DNA of 64,000 nt from Macrostomum lignano (GCA_002269645.1 NIVC01003955.1:3788-67787); one strand, 5' to 3'; shown: positions 28,887 to 45,074, counted from the stretch's first letter. Numbers and translations are program-made. The notes: a model not told the origin generated them from the letters alone.

Positions 28887-31800
28887 TCATTTTGGGTGAG
28901 AAATTGTTTCTACTAGCAGCATCTTCACCACTTCCAGCTGATTCGCTCTCGCAGCGTATTTAGCTGCTTCCATACACAGCTGATGTCTTCGACCCTTGTC
29001 AGCAAATGCTTGTACCAGAAACTTTACCACAGCTAACTGACCATTGGTTGCAGCTAGTCGAGCTGTCTCAATGCAGCAAATGTCCCTCATGCATTTCTCA
29101 GAAATCGCCTGCACGAGAAACTTCACCACGTCCAACTGACCCTTGCTTGCTGCAGATGCCGCAGCCATCAAGCAACACTGGTCTCTTGTACTTTGTTCAG
29201 CAATCGTTTGCACGAGAAACTTCACCACGTCCAACTGACCCTTGCTTGCTGCAGATGCCGCAACTCTCAAGCAACACTGGTCTCTCGTTCTTTGGTCAGT
29301 AATTGTCTGGACAAGGAACTTCACAACATCCAACTGACCCTTGATAGCAGCAAAATTTGCCGCCATGATGCAGCACCGTTCTTTCATTTTTTGATCGTAG
29401 GCAGTCTTTACCAGGGTTTCAACAACTTCCCACTGACTCTTTCTAGCTGCATATCGCACAGTTTTAATAAAAAAGAGTTTCTCTTTACGTTGCGAAGACG
29501 TTGAGATCTGATAACCAACGGATTTTTCTTCACTACGCGAGCGTTTTGAATTCTCAGACGGAGACCTAAAAGTGAAAAAAGATGTCTATATTGGAGAAAA
29601 CAGCAATTTTCATATATTCCAGCAAGAAAAATTAATGAAAAATCTCAACTGAAACTCTTGTTTGATGAAAATTCCACCAACATTTTTTGTCTATTGGTTT
29701 TTAGTCCCACAGTTTGGTTGATTAAAACAACTTACATTCTTGTTGGCAAATTTTCCGATGATTTCTGCTCTGTCGCAAGTTCGTCCGGTTTAGAACACTG
29801 GCCTTTCTGTTCTGGAGTTGCTACCTGTGGTATCGCATCATCAGCACTACAGTTTCAAGTTTTTTTATTCTATTTATAAATTACGATTCAATACGCGGTA
29901 CTAAAACTAATGCATTATCACACCTTACATCTGGAGATTCCGACTTCTCCAGCACTGCGCGTACAGCCGTTTGCCCTTTGTGTTCCGCCACATCTAGCGG
30001 AGTCGCATTGCAAAAGTTCACTTTATCCAAGGATGCGCCGTGCCTTCGTAAAAGCTTAATAACTTCCAGATTTCCAACAGAAGCTGCTAGATGTAGAGGC
30101 GTGTTCCCCTCCAGATCCGAGGCGTTCACATCGGCATTCAGTTGAAGCAGCCGCTCTGCGCACTTTACCAGCCATTTACTTGAAGGCCGCAAGCCTCCAC
30201 TGGCTGCCACCGTGAGGGGAGTTCTGCCCTCCCAGTCTCTCCAGTTACAGTTAACACTGTTGACTCTTTTACAAAATTCTTTCTTCTTGGCTTGGCTGAT
30301 GAGGCAGTTCAGCTTCTCGGCTTCCTGAAATGGTTCAAGAATACGAATTATTGTTTTGCATGCAGTTTTATTAAATGAATCTTTTGCAAAGCACCGAAAA
30401 TGCATTCTTACCGAAATTGACTCCTCGTTCAATTGAAATTTTTCTCTGAAAGGTTTTTTACGAATTAAAATTGTAATGAAAAGACTAACATGGTTTTTAA
30501 ATTAATATAAAAACGAACGAAACATTAAAAACAGAATGTATACTAAAGTACCTACATTGTTTATAAAGAACTGATAATTGTAGATAGATATAAAGATCAT
30601 CAAAACAGTAAGTTTTTTACTTACTGCAGAAGAAACAGGCAGATGTCTTGGTAACCCTGCTTCCAGGCCGACCAGTAAATGCTGGCATAATTCTTAGCAT
30701 TGTTTTCAAGCAGAATTTGCGGCTCATGCTTCGCAAGAATGCGCACTAGGTCAAGATTTCCAGCAGAAACAGCCATGCCCAAGGCTGAGCAACCAGAATT
30801 GTCCGTGATCTGGTCGGTCGCTCCATTATCTAACAAGATCTCTGTTAGCTGAGAATTCTCTTCTTCCACTGCAAGCAGCAATGGCGTCATAGAGCTATTA
30901 TCTGTGCCGTTGATATCTACACCCAATTTTCTTTCCAACAAGTTGCTCAGTAGAGCATCGTTGCCTGACAGGACGGCGCAGTGCAAGGCGGAGTGCCTCC
31001 GGCTGTCAGTGGCTCTGAGATAGGCTCCTTTGCTAATGAGCATTTTGGCAAATTCGACATGCGCCTCAGAGCCTTCACAAAAGCCTGTGACTGACGCAGC
31101 TGCGGCGCAAAGCAGAGGCGTGCGACCAGGAAATGCTTCGTGTTGATGATGCAGCACCGAAAGCAGATGGGAGTCGGGGATTTGAGCTAGTTGTAATGTG
31201 TCACCAACGGCTGCAAGACGATGGAGAGCGCGTGGAGTCTGAAATTGCATATGGAGCGTATTATAATTAATTGGCAAACATTGCACAGATCTTTGTAATT
31301 GCCTGAATATTTGTTTATTAAGAACCAATTAAAGCATCAAACTTACTAGCAATGATTCATCACCACCGAACTGAGTTTCGGCCTCCTCAGCACTGAAATG
31401 GTACGAAGGCAGCACAGATTTTAAATTCGCATATTGGATTTGGATTTGGTTAAAAGAAAGTCTAGCATAAACAGCATGCATGAGAAACCAGCTTACATTT
31501 TAGCTGCTACTTGCAGCAAGATAACAGTATTTCGGCATGGCACAGTGAAGCATTCCAGTTGAAACGAGTAGTTTTGAGCAAGCTGTTTACCCTGTGACAC
31601 TGCAACACGCAGGAACTGGTCGTCGCAGAACTCACTCAACACCTGTTCCGCTGACAGAACCCCAGTATCGTGCAAACGGTCTTCTTTTTCGTACTTAAAC
31701 AAAATGATTCGAACATTTAATTGAGATTTATTCGATTCCAGTCGAATTCGAGTTGCATCATGGTTCGGTAGTCGTTTGCGTTGATTTTCAACTGCTTTTC

Positions 31801-32551
31801 CAGTTCTCAGATACCATTCGCAGGTGCTGAGTTCGTTGAACAGAATGCACAGATAGACTGGTGCAGACATTTCCGAACTTTTAAGGATGCAGTTTCTGAA
31901 CTTTTCATCCAACGCTTCTTCTCCGTTTAGACAGGAAACGATAGCAAGTCTCATCGAACACCACGGCAGATCTCCCCTCTGTACCGAGATTTCTCCAGTG
32001 TTCAAGTCTAAAAGCGACTCCAAATGAGTTTCTTCTGGAACTTTCAGCAGATGACAAAAGACAAATGCCGAGGCGAGAAAATGCTTCACTAAAATATGAT
32101 CAAGAAGCTTAGGCAGTACAGATGAGTTCAGGAGTAGTTCGGCCGTGTTTGGATCGATTTGAATTCTCAATTGCTTGATTCCAGTCGCTTTATTCAAAAG
32201 CGATACGATTCTGCACAAGTCACTTAGCACTGGAGGGAACGTTTGATTTAATCGCTGAATCGAATTCGACAAACCAGCAAAGCACACTTTAACCGAGTAC
32301 AATGATGATACCAAAACGCATAGCGACTGGTCAGGTTTAAAACTATCTTGCGAGTCCTGATCATTTAAATCGGAAAAAATGATCTCACAATTTGCGTCCT
32401 GGCTGTCTGAAGTCGTCAACACGGTCAGTCTTAGGTCTGGGCTCGACTCAGATCTGTGAATTTCACTCAGCTGCATTTGAGAAGCCCCAGAAATGTTACA
32501 CAGTGCCAGAAGGTTGCGTCTGATGTCCTCACATGGTTGCAGTAGATTCAT
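28887..32551 (-). CDS. Ankyrin-repeat protein 1, ~1008 aa: unknown ~350-aa N-domain, two ANK blocks, C-terminal 37-aa helical repeats (exons 32551-31497, 31392-31347, 31238-30625, 30445-29924, 29846-29736, 29565-28887)
   Basis: GRTPLLCAA, GNTPLHLAA, GMTPLL-type ANK motifs; phase-consistent GT-AG chain totalling 3027 nt; repeats like ITDQRTRDQCCLRVAASAASKGQLDVVKFLVQ. Confidence 0.8.
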
Positions 32552-43763: not shown

Positions 43764-45074
43764 ATGAGTACGGAAAATGATTTTCTGCGAATAAAGAGCT
43801 CCCTCGAGGAACTCGATCAAGTTGTCCAAGCACTAAGACTCGGCGAAGAATGTAAAGACAAAAAAGAAGAAACTATAAGCGAAGCCAAACGTTTCGTTAC
43901 TTCTCTTATACAAGAGGCTCTTGTTGAATTGAAGACAGTACACAGCAATGAAGACTTGAAATATCGACCAAAGTTTATTCAAGCAGCGGCGCTGGTGATT
44001 CTGGCGACGTTCTGTCCAGCTGACACTCTGACTGTCCAGTTGGATGGCTGCCAAAAGGACTCTTCCCGAATACGAATACGAATTCTCGGCGAGCTACTGA
44101 GCAGCGCATTCTTACAAATTTCCTGTTGGAGATCGTCTTCACCACCAAATAGAGGACGCATCAGTAGGCCTAGGCTACGTAAACTGCCAGCTGTGAAAGG
44201 TGATGATTCACCAAACTTAATGTGGAGATACTCTGATGTTTCCGCTGAGCTGCCTGACCGCTACAGCTCAAAAATTACCTTAGCGACAGCTATGTCTCTG
44301 CTATTGACAGAGCTAAGCAAGTCATTTCTAAAATGCCAATTCAAATCGGTGGAAATTCCATGCCTCATCGATCTGTTCAAAATTAGCAGTGCAAACAATC
44401 AGAATCAAATCGGTTCGCTGATTGAAGAGTTTTATGCTCTAGTGAACGTTTGCCTTCACGAGCCGTACACGCATCCGGAGCATTCCGTGACAAGTGAAAC
44501 CGTCGCCTACGATTTCTCCATAACAAACCAGAACGGCAAGAAAATACGCTACGTCTCAGTGAAGTCAATCAACTTCAACGACAGACGGCCTAGAAAAAAA
44601 TCCGCTTTCTCGTTTCTATCAGGCGAAGATGAGTTGACGGTGCTGTTGCACGACTGCAACTGTCGCGAGTTCTGCGAGCAGCATCCGATTTGGAAACTTC
44701 AGATCAAACTCAAACCGATACCGGATGATGACGCTCGATCGGTTATCCCGGACGAAGATGGCAAACAAAGGTTAAGCAAACTTCTGGCCGGGTTTAAGTG
44801 CCACCGAAAGAAAGATTTTATGCGAATCCTTAAAGCGGCCAGATGTGGCACAATCTATTTGGTCTCAGGTAAGCTGCTATTCGATCTGAGATTTGCATTC
44901 AGCTCGGGATCTATTCATTCGATCTTATATTGCAAAGAGAAGAGCTGCCTACGCAGGAATTTGAAATGCGCCATTGAAGAAGCATCAAAGCAGCAGTTTG
45001 AAGACGAGGAAGGACAAAATAGTAGTCCTGAGCAGATACCAGCGATAGTTATAGACAAGGAATCATGCGCTTAA
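43764..45074 (+). CDS. Unknown 436-aa protein, paralog of 33293-34537; candidate PD-(D/E)xK-like nuclease with H-x-C-x-C-x3-C motif
   Basis: Long uninterrupted ORF; conserved blocks VEIPCLIDLFKISSANNQ, SETVAYDFSI, VSVKSINF, VLLHDCNCREFC, LFDLRFAF. Confidence 0.82.
   Translation: MSTENDFLRIKSSLEELDQVVQALRLGEECKDKKEETISEAKRFVTSLIQEALVELKTVHSNEDLKYRPKFIQAAALVILATFCPADTLTVQLDGCQKDSSRIRIRILGELLSSAFLQISCWRSSSPPNRGRISRPRLRKLPAVKGDDSPNLMWRYSDVSAELPDRYSSKITLATAMSLLLTELSKSFLKCQFKSVEIPCLIDLFKISSANNQNQIGSLIEEFYALVNVCLHEPYTHPEHSVTSETVAYDFSITNQNGKKIRYVSVKSINFNDRRPRKKSAFSFLSGEDELTVLLHDCNCREFCEQHPIWKLQIKLKPIPDDDARSVIPDEDGKQRLSKLLAGFKCHRKKDFMRILKAARCGTIYLVSGKLLFDLRFAFSSGSIHSILYCKEKSCLRRNLKCAIEEASKQQFEDEEGQNSSPEQIPAIVIDKESCA

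What the first reader, a model, noticed from the sequence alone, without database searches (positions are those of the whole stretch)
28887..45074. Tandemly duplicated head-to-head cassette: ankyrin/helical-repeat gene paired with a nuclease-like gene
Seen: the same two-gene unit occurs twice. ANK1 (-, 32551) faces gene N1 (+, 33293) across ~740 bp; ANK2 (-, ~43.1 kb) faces N2 (+, 43764) across ~600 bp. Both partners are strongly diverged between units, yet pairing, orientation and short spacer are kept, and both N ORFs remain fully open. Inference: selection keeps them as a co-regulated pair, such as a sensor/effector or toxin/antidote module. Known analogies (not homology claims): head-to-head plant NLR pairs RPS4/RRS1, Wolbachia CifA/CifB with a PD-(D/E)xK toxin, and RNase L, which joins ankyrins to a nuclease.
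Basis: partly seen in the sequence, partly recalled or inferred. Interest (0 to 1): 0.85.

Follow-up and report, generated by a model that had tools for sequence, protein, structure and literature searches.

The report
Flatworm ankyrin–orphan gene pair family
In the flatworm Macrostomum lignano, an intronless gene of unknown function always sits head-to-head with an ankyrin-repeat gene, and this pair has been copied as a unit at least six times; the pairing is real and conserved, but nothing I could run shows that the partner is a nuclease, a toxin or an immune effector.

Summary
The window is Macrostomum lignano chromosomal DNA. N1 (33293..34537,+) and N2 (43764..45074,+) are open, intronless paralogs (27% identity, E 1e-21). 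Each faces a multi-exon ankyrin-repeat gene across 741 and 590 bp.

An exhaustive profile search of 1.84 billion proteins found only five real N clusters, all from M. lignano. These represent six locus types, and at all six an ankyrin gene lies divergently 0.47–0.97 kb upstream.

In five of the six, the ankyrin partner begins with a second orphan domain of about 350 aa. ANK2 in this window has lost that domain. Trees for N and for the ankyrin partner agree where they are resolved. Both genes show purifying selection (dN/dS about 0.2–0.3).

"Nuclease-like" is unsupported. Pfam, NCBIfam, PADLOC, PHROGs and PDB sequence profiles gave no credible match. Two AlphaFold runs failed (pLDDT about 45). 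The would-be (D/E)xK motif is S-V-K in every paralog.

Best reading: a lineage-restricted module that duplicates as a unit, probably co-expressed, whose two products probably act together. The toxin/antidote and sensor/effector readings remain untested.

The parts
28887..32551 (-). ANK1 gene (whole coding span, at least 5 exons). It encodes an orphan N-terminal domain, ankyrin block 1, a linker mini-exon, ankyrin block 2, and a C-terminal array of 33-aa derived ankyrin repeats.
   Evidence: ORFs; Pfam Ank hits; splice junctions inferred from GT-AG sites and homology to P0010; colinear with annotated ANK genes in NIVC contigs.
31497..32551 (-). ANK1 exon 1: orphan N-terminal domain of about 351 aa ('ANK-N'). 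Invariant residues include D111, C113, H167, C235, N239, E240, R260, N263, D310, D311, C334 and P338-C-R340.
   Evidence: Conserved at 28–62% identity in the ANK partners of five of six units. No Pfam or PDB match. dN/dS 0.31 against the allelic copy and 0.18 against paralog U3.
30625..31302 (-). ANK1 exon 2: ankyrin block 1 (about 4–5 repeats), ending in the motif YASIYWSAWKQGYQDICLFLL.
   Evidence: Pfam Ank_2 E 2.7e-34; junctions.
30412..30445 (-). ANK1 mini-exon (34 nt, encodes QEKFQLNEESIS). Inferred.
   Evidence: GT-AG sites, reading phase, and the match to P0010 'HTKFGLTEHSIS'.
29929..30324 (-). ANK1 exon 4: ankyrin block 2 (W-E-G-R-T-P-L...). This is the exon shared by all six partner genes, including ANK2.
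   Evidence: Pfam Ank E 4e-17; tblastn to all units; junctions.
28887..29504 (-). ANK1 last exon: about 5 copies of a 33-aa derived ankyrin repeat (..RDQCC..AAS-AA-KGQLDVVKFLVQTI..). The 5' boundary is approximate.
   Evidence: Pfam Ank_2 E 1.3e-23; 99-bp tandem repeat at 29098–29343; homologous to the ANK2 C-terminus, E 4e-15.
32552..33292 (.). Spacer 1 (741 bp) between the ANK1 ATG and the N1 ATG; presumed bidirectional promoter region.
   Evidence: Coordinates. No TSS data. No statistically supported shared motif with the other spacers.
33293..34537 (+). N1: intronless gene of 414 aa from an orphan family. It is 98% identical to BOX15_Mlig025917g2.
   Evidence: dN/dS 0.23–0.26 against allelic copies (binomial P 0.004).
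35292..35982 (.). 22-bp minisatellite (about 31 copies) lying between the 3' ends of N1 and ANK2. It separates the two units and is not part of either gene.
   Evidence: Copy number varies between allelic contigs.
37001..43173 (-). ANK2 gene (whole coding span). It has no ANK-N domain and no complete first ankyrin block. It carries ankyrin block 2, two extra ankyrin exons, and about 7 C-terminal derived repeats.
   Evidence: ORFs; Pfam; annotated models of 662–1034 aa in allelic contigs; 5' end read.
43161..43173 (-). Inferred ANK2 first coding mini-exon, ATGAAAAATGGGG, followed by the donor GTGAGT.
   Evidence: Sequence. The position matches the annotated CDS starts in L002 and L003 after coordinate conversion.
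42884..43076 (-). ANK2 exon 2. Its end (..SKYYWPVWKVENREVCGVLL) corresponds only to the tail of ankyrin block 1 in the other partner genes.
41923..42366 (-). ANK2 ankyrin block 2 (ORF limits), orthologous to ANK1 exon 4.
   Evidence: Pfam; 40% identity, E 1e-18.
40640..41149 (-). Additional ANK2 ankyrin exon (ORF limits).
   Evidence: Pfam Ank_2 E 4e-14.
39263..39781 (-). Additional ANK2 ankyrin exon (ORF limits).
   Evidence: Pfam Ank_2 E 4e-26.
37001..37822 (-). ANK2 last exon: about 7 degenerate 33–35-aa repeats, homologous to the ANK1 C-terminal repeats.
   Evidence: No Pfam hit, but BLASTP E 4e-15 to the ANK1 C-terminus.
43174..43763 (.). Spacer 2 (590 bp) between the inferred ANK2 ATG and the N2 ATG.
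43764..45074 (+). N2: intronless gene of 436 aa, 98% identical to BOX15_Mlig026431g3. It keeps all 26 family-invariant residues.
   Evidence: Too few differences from the allelic copy to test selection (5 non-synonymous, 1 synonymous).

Best explanation
This is a lineage-restricted two-gene module, seen so far only in Macrostomum lignano.

One gene, N, is intronless and encodes an intracellular protein of about 400 aa from an orphan family. Its invariant core is E-I-P-C ... E ... D ... S-V-K ... H-x-C-x-C-x3-C.

The other gene is transcribed divergently from a 0.5–1 kb spacer. It is a multi-exon ankyrin-repeat gene. Its product has its own orphan N-terminal domain of about 350 aa, two ankyrin blocks, and a C-terminal array of derived 33-aa ankyrin repeats whose number varies widely between paralogs.

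Shown:
- The module has duplicated as a unit at least six times. The two copies in this window are old, non-sister duplicates.
- Both genes are transcribed and are under purifying selection.

Inferred:
- The short spacer acts as a shared bidirectional promoter that co-expresses the two genes.
- The ankyrin protein, a protein-binding scaffold by family, binds or regulates its cognate N protein. Copies that lose the partner would then not be retained.

The biochemical activity of N is unknown. The conserved Cys/His cluster suggests a metal site. A nuclease activity is possible but unsupported.
For: Organism and gene identity: N2 is 98% identical to Mlig026431g3 and N1 98% to Mlig025917g2. The window is colinear with three NIVC contigs at 96.5–98.7% DNA identity.

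Family size: an exhaustive HMMER profile search of 1.84e9 representative proteins returned five real clusters, all from M. lignano.

Pairing: all six locus types have an ANK gene on the opposite strand immediately upstream. These are U1 and U2 here, plus L001, L005, L006 and L007. Spacers are 741, 590, 721, about 470–630, 549 and 965 bp.

Partner family: the partners belong to one subfamily. They share the ANK-N domain in five of six units (A3), ankyrin block 2 in all six, and the C-terminal repeats.

Co-duplication: NJ trees of N and of ANK block 2 both recover (U1,U3) at 100% and 99.5% bootstrap, and (U1,U3,U5) at 49% and 74%.

Selection: dN/dS is 0.23–0.26 for N1 (P 0.004) and 0.31 for ANK-N (P 8e-5) against allelic copies. 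It is 0.29 and 0.18 between units U1 and U3. Twenty-six columns are invariant across all six N lineages.

Transcription: the GenBank gene models derive only from RNA-seq-based transcript assembly, with repeat-overlapping transcripts removed (PMC5730564).

Not a mobile element: no flanking inverted repeats, no transposase, RT or integrase domain in the units, and no relatives in viral contigs. The neighbours are ordinary metazoan genes, an ADAM/ADAMTS-like gene and Pecanex.
Against: - There are no expression, TSS or interaction data, so co-regulation and physical partnership are inferred from arrangement alone.
- Adjacency can be inherited passively when a short unit is duplicated whole.
- The six spacers share no statistically supported motif. 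The best shared 8-mer, ACTGTACA, is in five of six spacers, but a match that good arises in 6% of Markov shuffles.
- ANK2 has lost the ANK-N domain and the first ankyrin block while N2 stays intact. If there is an interaction, that domain cannot be universally required.
- One allelic copy of N2 carries an 8-bp frameshifting deletion. This may be real decay or a long-read assembly error.
- The protein databases probably lack annotated proteomes of other Macrostomum species, so 'M. lignano only' may really mean genus- or order-restricted.
Confidence: 0.5

Rival explanations
1. Passive linkage. The two genes are functionally unrelated neighbours. Because they are less than 1 kb apart, segmental duplications copy them together, and nothing has yet separated them. 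The conserved arrangement reflects history, perhaps helped by overlapping promoters, and not a joint function.
For: All copies trace to duplication of one ancestral unit, so the six pairings are not independent events. No shared spacer motif is significant. ANK2 could lose a third of the protein without N2 being lost. ANK genes are commonly expanded in flatworm genomes (bioRxiv 10.1101/2024.02.05.578899).
Against: Divergence between units is deep: 25–35% amino-acid identity, with dS saturated even for the closest pair. Units now lie on different contigs with different neighbours. Even so, no solo N gene was found among all detectable family members, and both genes stay under purifying selection.
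Confidence: 0.3
2. N is a PD-(D/E)xK-type nuclease, the effector or toxin, and the cognate ankyrin protein holds it in check or targets it, as sensor or antidote. That would make it a eukaryotic toxin/antidote or immune sensor/effector pair.
For: An invariant E222 ... D250 ... S265-V-K267 pattern falls on a predicted helix–strand–strand segment in both AlphaFold runs. An invariant Cys lies before the core and an H-x-C-x-C-x3-C cluster lies after it. From memory, this recalls the Fe-S/Zn-bearing RecB-like nucleases, which is a lead and not a test. The family shows unit duplication, rapid divergence and very variable repeat numbers in the ANK partner (about 5, about 7, and more than 40 repeats), which is typical of conflict-driven families.
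Against: No nuclease family or structure is matched at any threshold by Pfam, NCBIfam, PADLOC, PHROGs or PDB sequence profiles. Both structure models are unusable (pLDDT 45.6 and 45.3) and Foldseek finds nothing with E below 0.9. The acidic residue of the (D/E)xK motif is Ser in all six paralogs. dN/dS of 0.2–0.3 shows ordinary purifying selection and not an arms-race signal. There is no evidence of toxicity, segregation distortion or infection response.
Confidence: 0.12
3. The pair is the cargo or core of a mobile or virus-derived element, which would explain the intronless N gene and the multiple dispersed copies.
For: N is intronless in a genome averaging about 5 introns per gene (PMC5730564). 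Copies are dispersed on several contigs. Minisatellites border both units. A retroelement sits inside an ANK intron at L001.
Against: The units have no terminal inverted or long direct repeats. No transposase, RT or integrase lies within the units. Viral contigs and phage families contain no relatives. The ANK partner has normal multi-exon host gene structure. The GenBank annotation excluded repeat-overlapping transcripts, yet it keeps these genes. Copies are ancient and diverged, not young and near-identical. The retroelement at L001 is an independent insertion.
Confidence: 0.05

Closest known systems
Ankyrin-repeat proteins (Pfam clan Ank: PF12796, PF00023 and related families)
   Same: The partner genes carry bona fide ankyrin repeats, with E down to 1e-34. 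These include a derived 33-aa C-terminal repeat that keeps the AA..G-LEVVKFL helix signature. Ankyrin repeats are protein-binding scaffolds.
   Different: The N-terminal domain of about 350 aa has no detectable relatives outside M. lignano. One source names a relative a 'Ras-associating domain-containing protein', but Pfam does not reproduce this at E up to 10.
Head-to-head paired plant NLR genes (for example RRS1/RPS4)
   Same: Divergent orientation with a short shared intergenic region. The pair duplicates and diversifies as a unit.
   Different: There is no NB-ARC/NACHT, TIR or LRR domain. This is an animal, and no immune phenotype is known. The resemblance is an analogy of arrangement only.
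Animal toxin–antidote elements (C. elegans peel-1/zeel-1, sup-35/pha-1)
   Same: Tightly linked two-gene units made of lineage-restricted, fast-evolving proteins in a hermaphroditic invertebrate.
   Different: Those elements are usually single loci with presence/absence polymorphism. Here there are six or more ancient paralogous units under purifying selection. There are no data on toxicity or transmission, and no homology.
Ankyrin-plus-nuclease proteins (RNase L, ANKLE1) and Wolbachia CifA/CifB
   Same: Ankyrin repeats or a partner protein are associated with a nuclease.
   Different: No KEN, GIY-YIG, PD-(D/E)xK or Cif domain is detectable in N or in ANK. In RNase L and ANKLE1 the modules are fused in one polypeptide.
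PD-(D/E)xK nuclease superfamily
   Same: An invariant E ... D ... x-V-K pattern sits on a helix–strand–strand segment, with D-to-K spacing of 17 residues.
   Different: The motif reads S-V-K, with no acidic residue, in all six paralogs. There is no profile or fold match, and the structure models are unreliable.
Bidirectional-promoter gene pairs in animal genomes
   Same: Divergent gene starts lie less than 1 kb apart, and the arrangement is conserved through evolution.
   Different: Such pairs are usually conserved housekeeping genes. Here both partners are lineage-restricted, and the whole pair has proliferated as a family.

Membership tests
Ankyrin-repeat proteins | Multiple 33-residue repeats matching the Ank profiles above curated thresholds | tested here: met
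   Ank_2 scores of 53–118 bits against a cut-off of 27.3 for six exons of ANK1 and ANK2. The 33-aa period is exact in the L007 partner.
PD-(D/E)xK nucleases | Significant sequence or profile similarity to a member family or to a solved structure | tested here: not met
   No credible hit for any of six N paralogs in Pfam (E up to 10), NCBIfam, PADLOC or PHROGs (E up to 1). The few matches listed are to non-nuclease families at non-significant E-values. The PDB profile search found only fimbrin at E 1.9.
PD-(D/E)xK nucleases | Catalytic D ... (D/E)-x-K triad | tested here: not met
   D250 and K267 are invariant, but the (D/E) position is Ser265 in all six paralogs. S-x-K variants with a relocated acid are known from memory, so this weakens the nuclease reading without excluding a related fold.
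PD-(D/E)xK nucleases | Alpha-beta-beta-beta-alpha-beta core fold | tested here: inconclusive
   Two AlphaFold2 runs gave mean pLDDT 45.6 and 45.3. The predicted order of secondary structure is compatible, but Foldseek against PDB gave no match with E below 0.9.
Paired NLR immune receptors | NB-ARC/NACHT nucleotide-binding domain in both partners | tested here: not met
   Pfam finds only Ank families in the ANK genes and nothing in N.
Paired NLR immune receptors | Head-to-head orientation with a shared short intergenic region, retained across paralogs | tested here: met
   Six of six units, with spacers of 0.47–0.97 kb.
Toxin–antidote selfish elements | Tightly linked two-gene unit | tested here: met
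   As above.
Toxin–antidote selfish elements | One product is toxic and is neutralised by the other; transmission bias in crosses | not testable with these tools
   This needs expression, knock-down and crossing experiments.
CifA/CifB and RNase L/ANKLE1 (ankyrin-associated nucleases) | Homology to the Cif, KEN or GIY-YIG domains | tested here: not met
   No such Pfam or PDB matches.
Transposable or viral element | Terminal repeats and element-encoded transposase, RT, integrase or capsid | tested here: not met
   No inverted repeats flank the units, there are no such domains, and viral contigs hold no relatives.

The most novel reading that the evidence does not exclude
N is a metal-cluster-bearing enzyme, possibly a divergent nuclease-fold protein, that is dangerous on its own. 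Each copy is expressed from a shared promoter together with a cognate ankyrin protein that sequesters or licenses it. That would make this a previously unknown, animal-encoded two-component effector/guard system, either innate-immune or selfish toxin–antidote, that expands by duplication of the whole unit and diversifies through its ankyrin arrays.
Probability: 0.12. Interest if true: 0.8.

Novelty: new variant of a known kind. Interest (0 to 1): 0.5.

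Why it matters
If the two products do work together, this would be a compact, genetically tractable example of a module that evolves as a pair. The partners have co-diverged across six paralogous units, which offers a natural experiment in cognate specificity. M. lignano has RNAi and transgenesis, so the 0.6–0.7 kb spacers could be tested directly as bidirectional promoters.

It also defines two orphan protein domains, N and ANK-N. Each has strongly conserved Cys, His and acidic residues, and neither has a known fold.

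If the linkage is only passive, this is simply an expanded lineage-specific gene family in a duplication-rich genome.

Tried and rejected
1. Nuclease assignment for N. I ran Pfam (single sequences and all six members at E up to 10), NCBIfam, PADLOC, PHROGs and a PDB sequence-profile search. None gave a credible match: the few hits listed were non-significant and to non-nuclease families.

2. Structure of N. AlphaFold2 on full-length N2 with a six-sequence alignment gave pLDDT 45.6. On the trimmed core (residues 140–400) with nine sequences it gave 45.3. Foldseek against PDB on both models found nothing meaningful.

4. Common origin of N and ANK-N. hhalign gave probability 0.04, so I rejected this.

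5. Shared promoter motif in the six spacers. The best 8-mer occurs in five of six spacers, but a match that good arises in 6% of shuffles. It is not significant.

6. Mobile-element or viral origin. There are no terminal repeats and no viral relatives.

7. Gene conversion from the U3 paralog as the cause of the divergence hot-spot in ANK1 exon 1. Rejected, because 28 versus 26 sites match U3.

8. Expression or phenotype data in the literature. The six Mlig gene IDs do not occur in any searchable full text. They also do not occur in the held supplements of four Macrostomum papers. A fifth paper had no supplements held as text, and one large table was truncated when stored.

9. Selection on N2. 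There are only six substitutions against the allelic copy, so the test has no power.

Full report
WHAT THE WINDOW IS

The region is eukaryotic: the coding sequence is broken into exons with GT-AG introns. N2 is 98% identical to the GenBank protein BOX15_Mlig026431g3 and N1 is 98% identical to BOX15_Mlig025917g2, both from Macrostomum lignano. The window is colinear with three contigs of assembly GCA_002269645.1 at 96.5–98.7% DNA identity. Those contigs are the allelic or homeologous copies expected in this recently polyploid genome (PMC5730564). The neighbours are ordinary metazoan genes. An ADAM/ADAMTS-like gene lies upstream, with exons at about 26.1–28.0 kb on the plus strand. Pecanex lies downstream, at about 50–56 kb on the minus strand.

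CHECKING THE OBSERVATION

N1 (33293..34537) and N2 (43764..45074) are uninterrupted frames of 414 and 436 codons. The chance of an open frame that long is about 1e-11. They are paralogs, with 27% identity and E 1e-21.

On the opposite strand, ANK1 (28887..32551) starts 741 bp from N1. ANK2 (about 37001..43173) starts 590 bp from N2. I infer the ANK2 start as a 13-nt first coding exon, ATGAAAAATGGGG|gtgagt, spliced to 43076. This coincides with the annotated CDS starts in two allelic contigs.

The ankyrin exons hit Pfam Ank families at E 1e-14 to 1e-34. ANK1 and ANK2 are paralogous: ankyrin block 2 is 40% identical (E 1e-18) and the C-terminal repeat exons match at E 4e-15. So the described layout is real and lies at the stated coordinates.

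CORRECTIONS TO THE OBSERVATION

- ANK1 opens with a 352-aa non-ankyrin domain encoded by a single exon (31497..32551), followed by a first ankyrin block. ANK2 has neither. Its second exon preserves only the last roughly 20 residues of that block (..KYYWPVWK..VCGVLL versus ..SIYWSAWKQGYQDICLFLL). tblastn finds no relic of the domain elsewhere in the window.
- The two units are not each other's closest relatives. N1 and ANK1 group with a unit on another contig, L001 (N 53–55% identity, ANK-N 62%). N2 is about equally distant from all the others.
- The C-terminal 'helical repeats' are a derived 33-aa ankyrin repeat (..RDxCC..AAxSAAxNGQLEVVKFLV..). There are about 5 copies in ANK1, about 7 degenerate copies in ANK2, and more than 40 near-perfect copies in the partner at L007.

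I searched a profile of N1 and N2 against 1.84 billion representative proteins with no word filter. It returned seven hits. Two are spurious repeat proteins. The other five are M. lignano hypothetical proteins. With N1 and N3 falling in one 50% cluster, this gives six locus types.

I fetched the genomic context of each. At every one, an ankyrin gene lies on the opposite strand immediately upstream, with spacers of 0.47–0.97 kb. These partners belong to one subfamily. Five of six begin with the same orphan domain, which I call ANK-N. It is 28–62% identical between units, with invariant D111, C113, H167, C235, N239, E240, R260, N263, D310, D311, C334 and P338-C-R340 (A3). All six share ankyrin block 2.

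Neighbour-joining trees of N (286 columns) and of ANK block 2 (91 columns) both recover (U1,U3) at 100% and 99.5% bootstrap, and (U1,U3,U5) at 49% and 74%. So the two genes have duplicated together. No solo N gene was found.

EVIDENCE THAT THE GENES ARE LIVE

The GenBank models for these genes derive solely from RNA-seq-based transcript assembly, after low-expression and repeat-overlapping transcripts were discarded (PMC5730564).

Against the allelic copies, N1 has 9 synonymous and 8 non-synonymous changes (dN/dS 0.23; P 0.004 under neutrality). ANK-N has 25 and 28 (dN/dS 0.31; P 8e-5). Between units U1 and U3, dN/dS is 0.29 for N and 0.18 for ANK-N, with dS saturated.

N2 differs from its allelic copy at only six sites, so it is untestable that way. 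It does retain all 26 residues that are invariant across the family.

WHAT THE PROTEINS ARE

N has no Pfam, NCBIfam, PADLOC or PHROGs match for any of its six members, even at permissive thresholds. The same holds for four diverged ANK-N members in NCBIfam, PADLOC and PHROGs, and for all six ANK-N sequences in Pfam. Neither profile matches any PDB sequence. N and ANK-N are unrelated to each other (hhalign probability 0.04). Neither has relatives in viral contigs.

Two AlphaFold2 runs on N gave mean pLDDT 45.6 (full length) and 45.3 (core). Foldseek found nothing with E below 0.9. So there is no fold assignment.

What can be read directly from the alignment is an invariant set:
- E197-I-P-C200, S208 and N211;
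- E222 on a predicted helix;
- D250 at the start of a predicted strand;
- S265-V-K267 in the next strand;
- F271, and the cluster H296-x-C-x-C300-x3-C304;
- P308 and C346.

The E ... D ... xVK pattern is presumably what looked nuclease-like. However, the residue that should be acidic in a (D/E)xK motif is serine in all six paralogs. The Cys/His cluster suggests a metal site. From memory, a single Cys before the core and a Cys cluster after it recalls the Fe-S-bearing RecB-like nucleases, but that is a lead and not a test. I put the chance that N has a PD-(D/E)xK-type fold at roughly one in five. The claim that it is a nuclease remains unsupported.

MOST LIKELY MECHANISM

Shown:
- a two-gene unit that duplicates as a whole;
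- both genes retained in all detectable copies;
- both genes constrained.

Inferred:
- the 0.5–1 kb spacer is a shared bidirectional promoter giving coordinated expression;
- the ankyrin protein, whose family function is protein binding, binds or regulates its cognate N protein.

This would explain why N is never found alone. It would also explain why the partner's repeat arrays vary so much between units. I give the coupled-pair reading a confidence of about 0.5.

RIVAL EXPLANATIONS

The main rival, at about 0.3, is passive linkage. All six pairings descend from one ancestral arrangement. A unit this compact is copied whole, and I found no statistically supported common motif in the spacers.

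The specific nuclease, toxin–antidote or sensor–effector version gets about 0.12. A mobile-element origin gets about 0.05. There are no terminal repeats and no element genes, and the ANK partner has normal host exon structure.

The derived state of unit 2 shows that the ANK-N domain is not indispensable for keeping the pair, because ANK2 is truncated while N2 is intact. N2 is also the only N protein lacking a roughly 15-residue loop after the S-V-K strand. This gives a testable idea: that the loop and ANK-N contact each other.

COMPARISON WITH KNOWN SYSTEMS

The partner gene is a member of the ankyrin-repeat class. N, ANK-N and the module as a whole cannot be filed under any known family.

The resemblances to paired plant NLRs, nematode toxin–antidote elements, CifA/CifB and RNase L/ANKLE1 are analogies of arrangement or of domain logic only. 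Their defining domains were looked for and are absent.

I found no paper mentioning these genes. The supplements I could search do not list them either. One further paper had no supplements held as text, and one large table was truncated in storage.

VERDICT

The functional story is still open.

This is a new, lineage-restricted family of gene pairs built from one known kind of protein and two orphan domains. It is moderately interesting now. It would be considerably more so if cognate interaction or an ANK-dependent N phenotype were shown.

Noticed in passing
window 32200-32651 (5' third of ANK1 exon 1 plus the first 100 bp of spacer 1): There is a local divergence hot-spot between this window and the allelic contig NIVC01004103. 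ANK1 exon 1 is 95.0% identical and the first 100 bp of spacer are 84% identical. The other ANK1 exons and introns are 98–99.7% identical and N1 is 98.6%. Synonymous divergence is 0.11 in ANK-N against 0.035 in N1. The differing sites match the U3 paralog equally often on both sides (28 versus 26), so conversion from U3 does not explain it. It may be an old haplotype or conversion from an unsampled paralog.
   Followed up: partly
window 26512-26912, 35292-35982, 45513-46121: Minisatellites of 19, 22 and 18 bp (21–34 copies each) bracket unit 1 and unit 2. The 22-bp array differs in copy number between allelic contigs. Tandem repeats make up about 15% of this genome, so this may be coincidence.
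   Followed up: no
L007:1-4200 (-), partner of N6 (Mlig028216g3): The ANK partner at this locus carries more than 40 near-perfect 33-aa derived ankyrin repeats in exact register and runs off the locus. The annotated model is 2931 aa. ANK1 has about 5 such repeats and ANK2 about 7, so copy number varies extremely within one subfamily.
   Followed up: partly
window 44560-44600 (N2 residues about 271-280): N2 alone lacks a loop of about 15 residues after the S-V-K strand that the other five N lineages keep. Its partner ANK2 alone lacks the ANK-N domain. This may be correlated loss at an interface, which is speculative.
   Followed up: no
window 44055-44075 (N2 codons 98-103); L002:20330-20345; L008: This is an indel-prone TC-rich site in N2. 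One allelic copy has a 6-bp in-frame deletion. Another has an 8-bp deletion that shifts the frame. That is either real decay of one N2 copy or a long-read assembly error.
   Followed up: partly
L006:20583-21881 (-): A second, inverted and nearly identical copy of the N5 gene lies about 9 kb downstream of the first, tail to tail. Its upstream side, where an ANK partner would be expected, lies beyond the fetched locus.
   Followed up: no
L001:4490-6330 (-) and 6720-7900: A reverse-transcriptase-like ORF set (read by eye, not run through a domain search) and a long simple-repeat array sit inside an intron of the ANK partner of N3. The L003 copy of ANK1 exon 1 shows a frameshift relative to the window.
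   Followed up: no
six spacers; window 32936-32943 and 43404-43411: The 8-mer ACTGTACA/TGTACAGT occurs once in five of the six ANK–N spacers. U2 and L001 share the 13-mer TGTACAGTTGCAA. A match that good arises in 6% of Markov shuffles, so it is only a weak lead for a promoter element.
   Followed up: partly
window 26123-27958 (+), 50083-56700 (-), 63074-63790 (-): The flanking genes are an ADAM/ADAMTS-like metalloprotease (Reprolysin and ADAMTS_CR_2 hits), Pecanex (Pecanex_C, E 7.5e-82), and an ORF with weak sub-threshold IPP-transferase and zinc-finger hits, possibly the C-terminus of a tRNA isopentenyltransferase. Several other long 'ORFs' in the window (for example 45432-46166, 55604-56707, 61910-62632) overlap tandem repeats and are probably artefacts of them.
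   Followed up: partly
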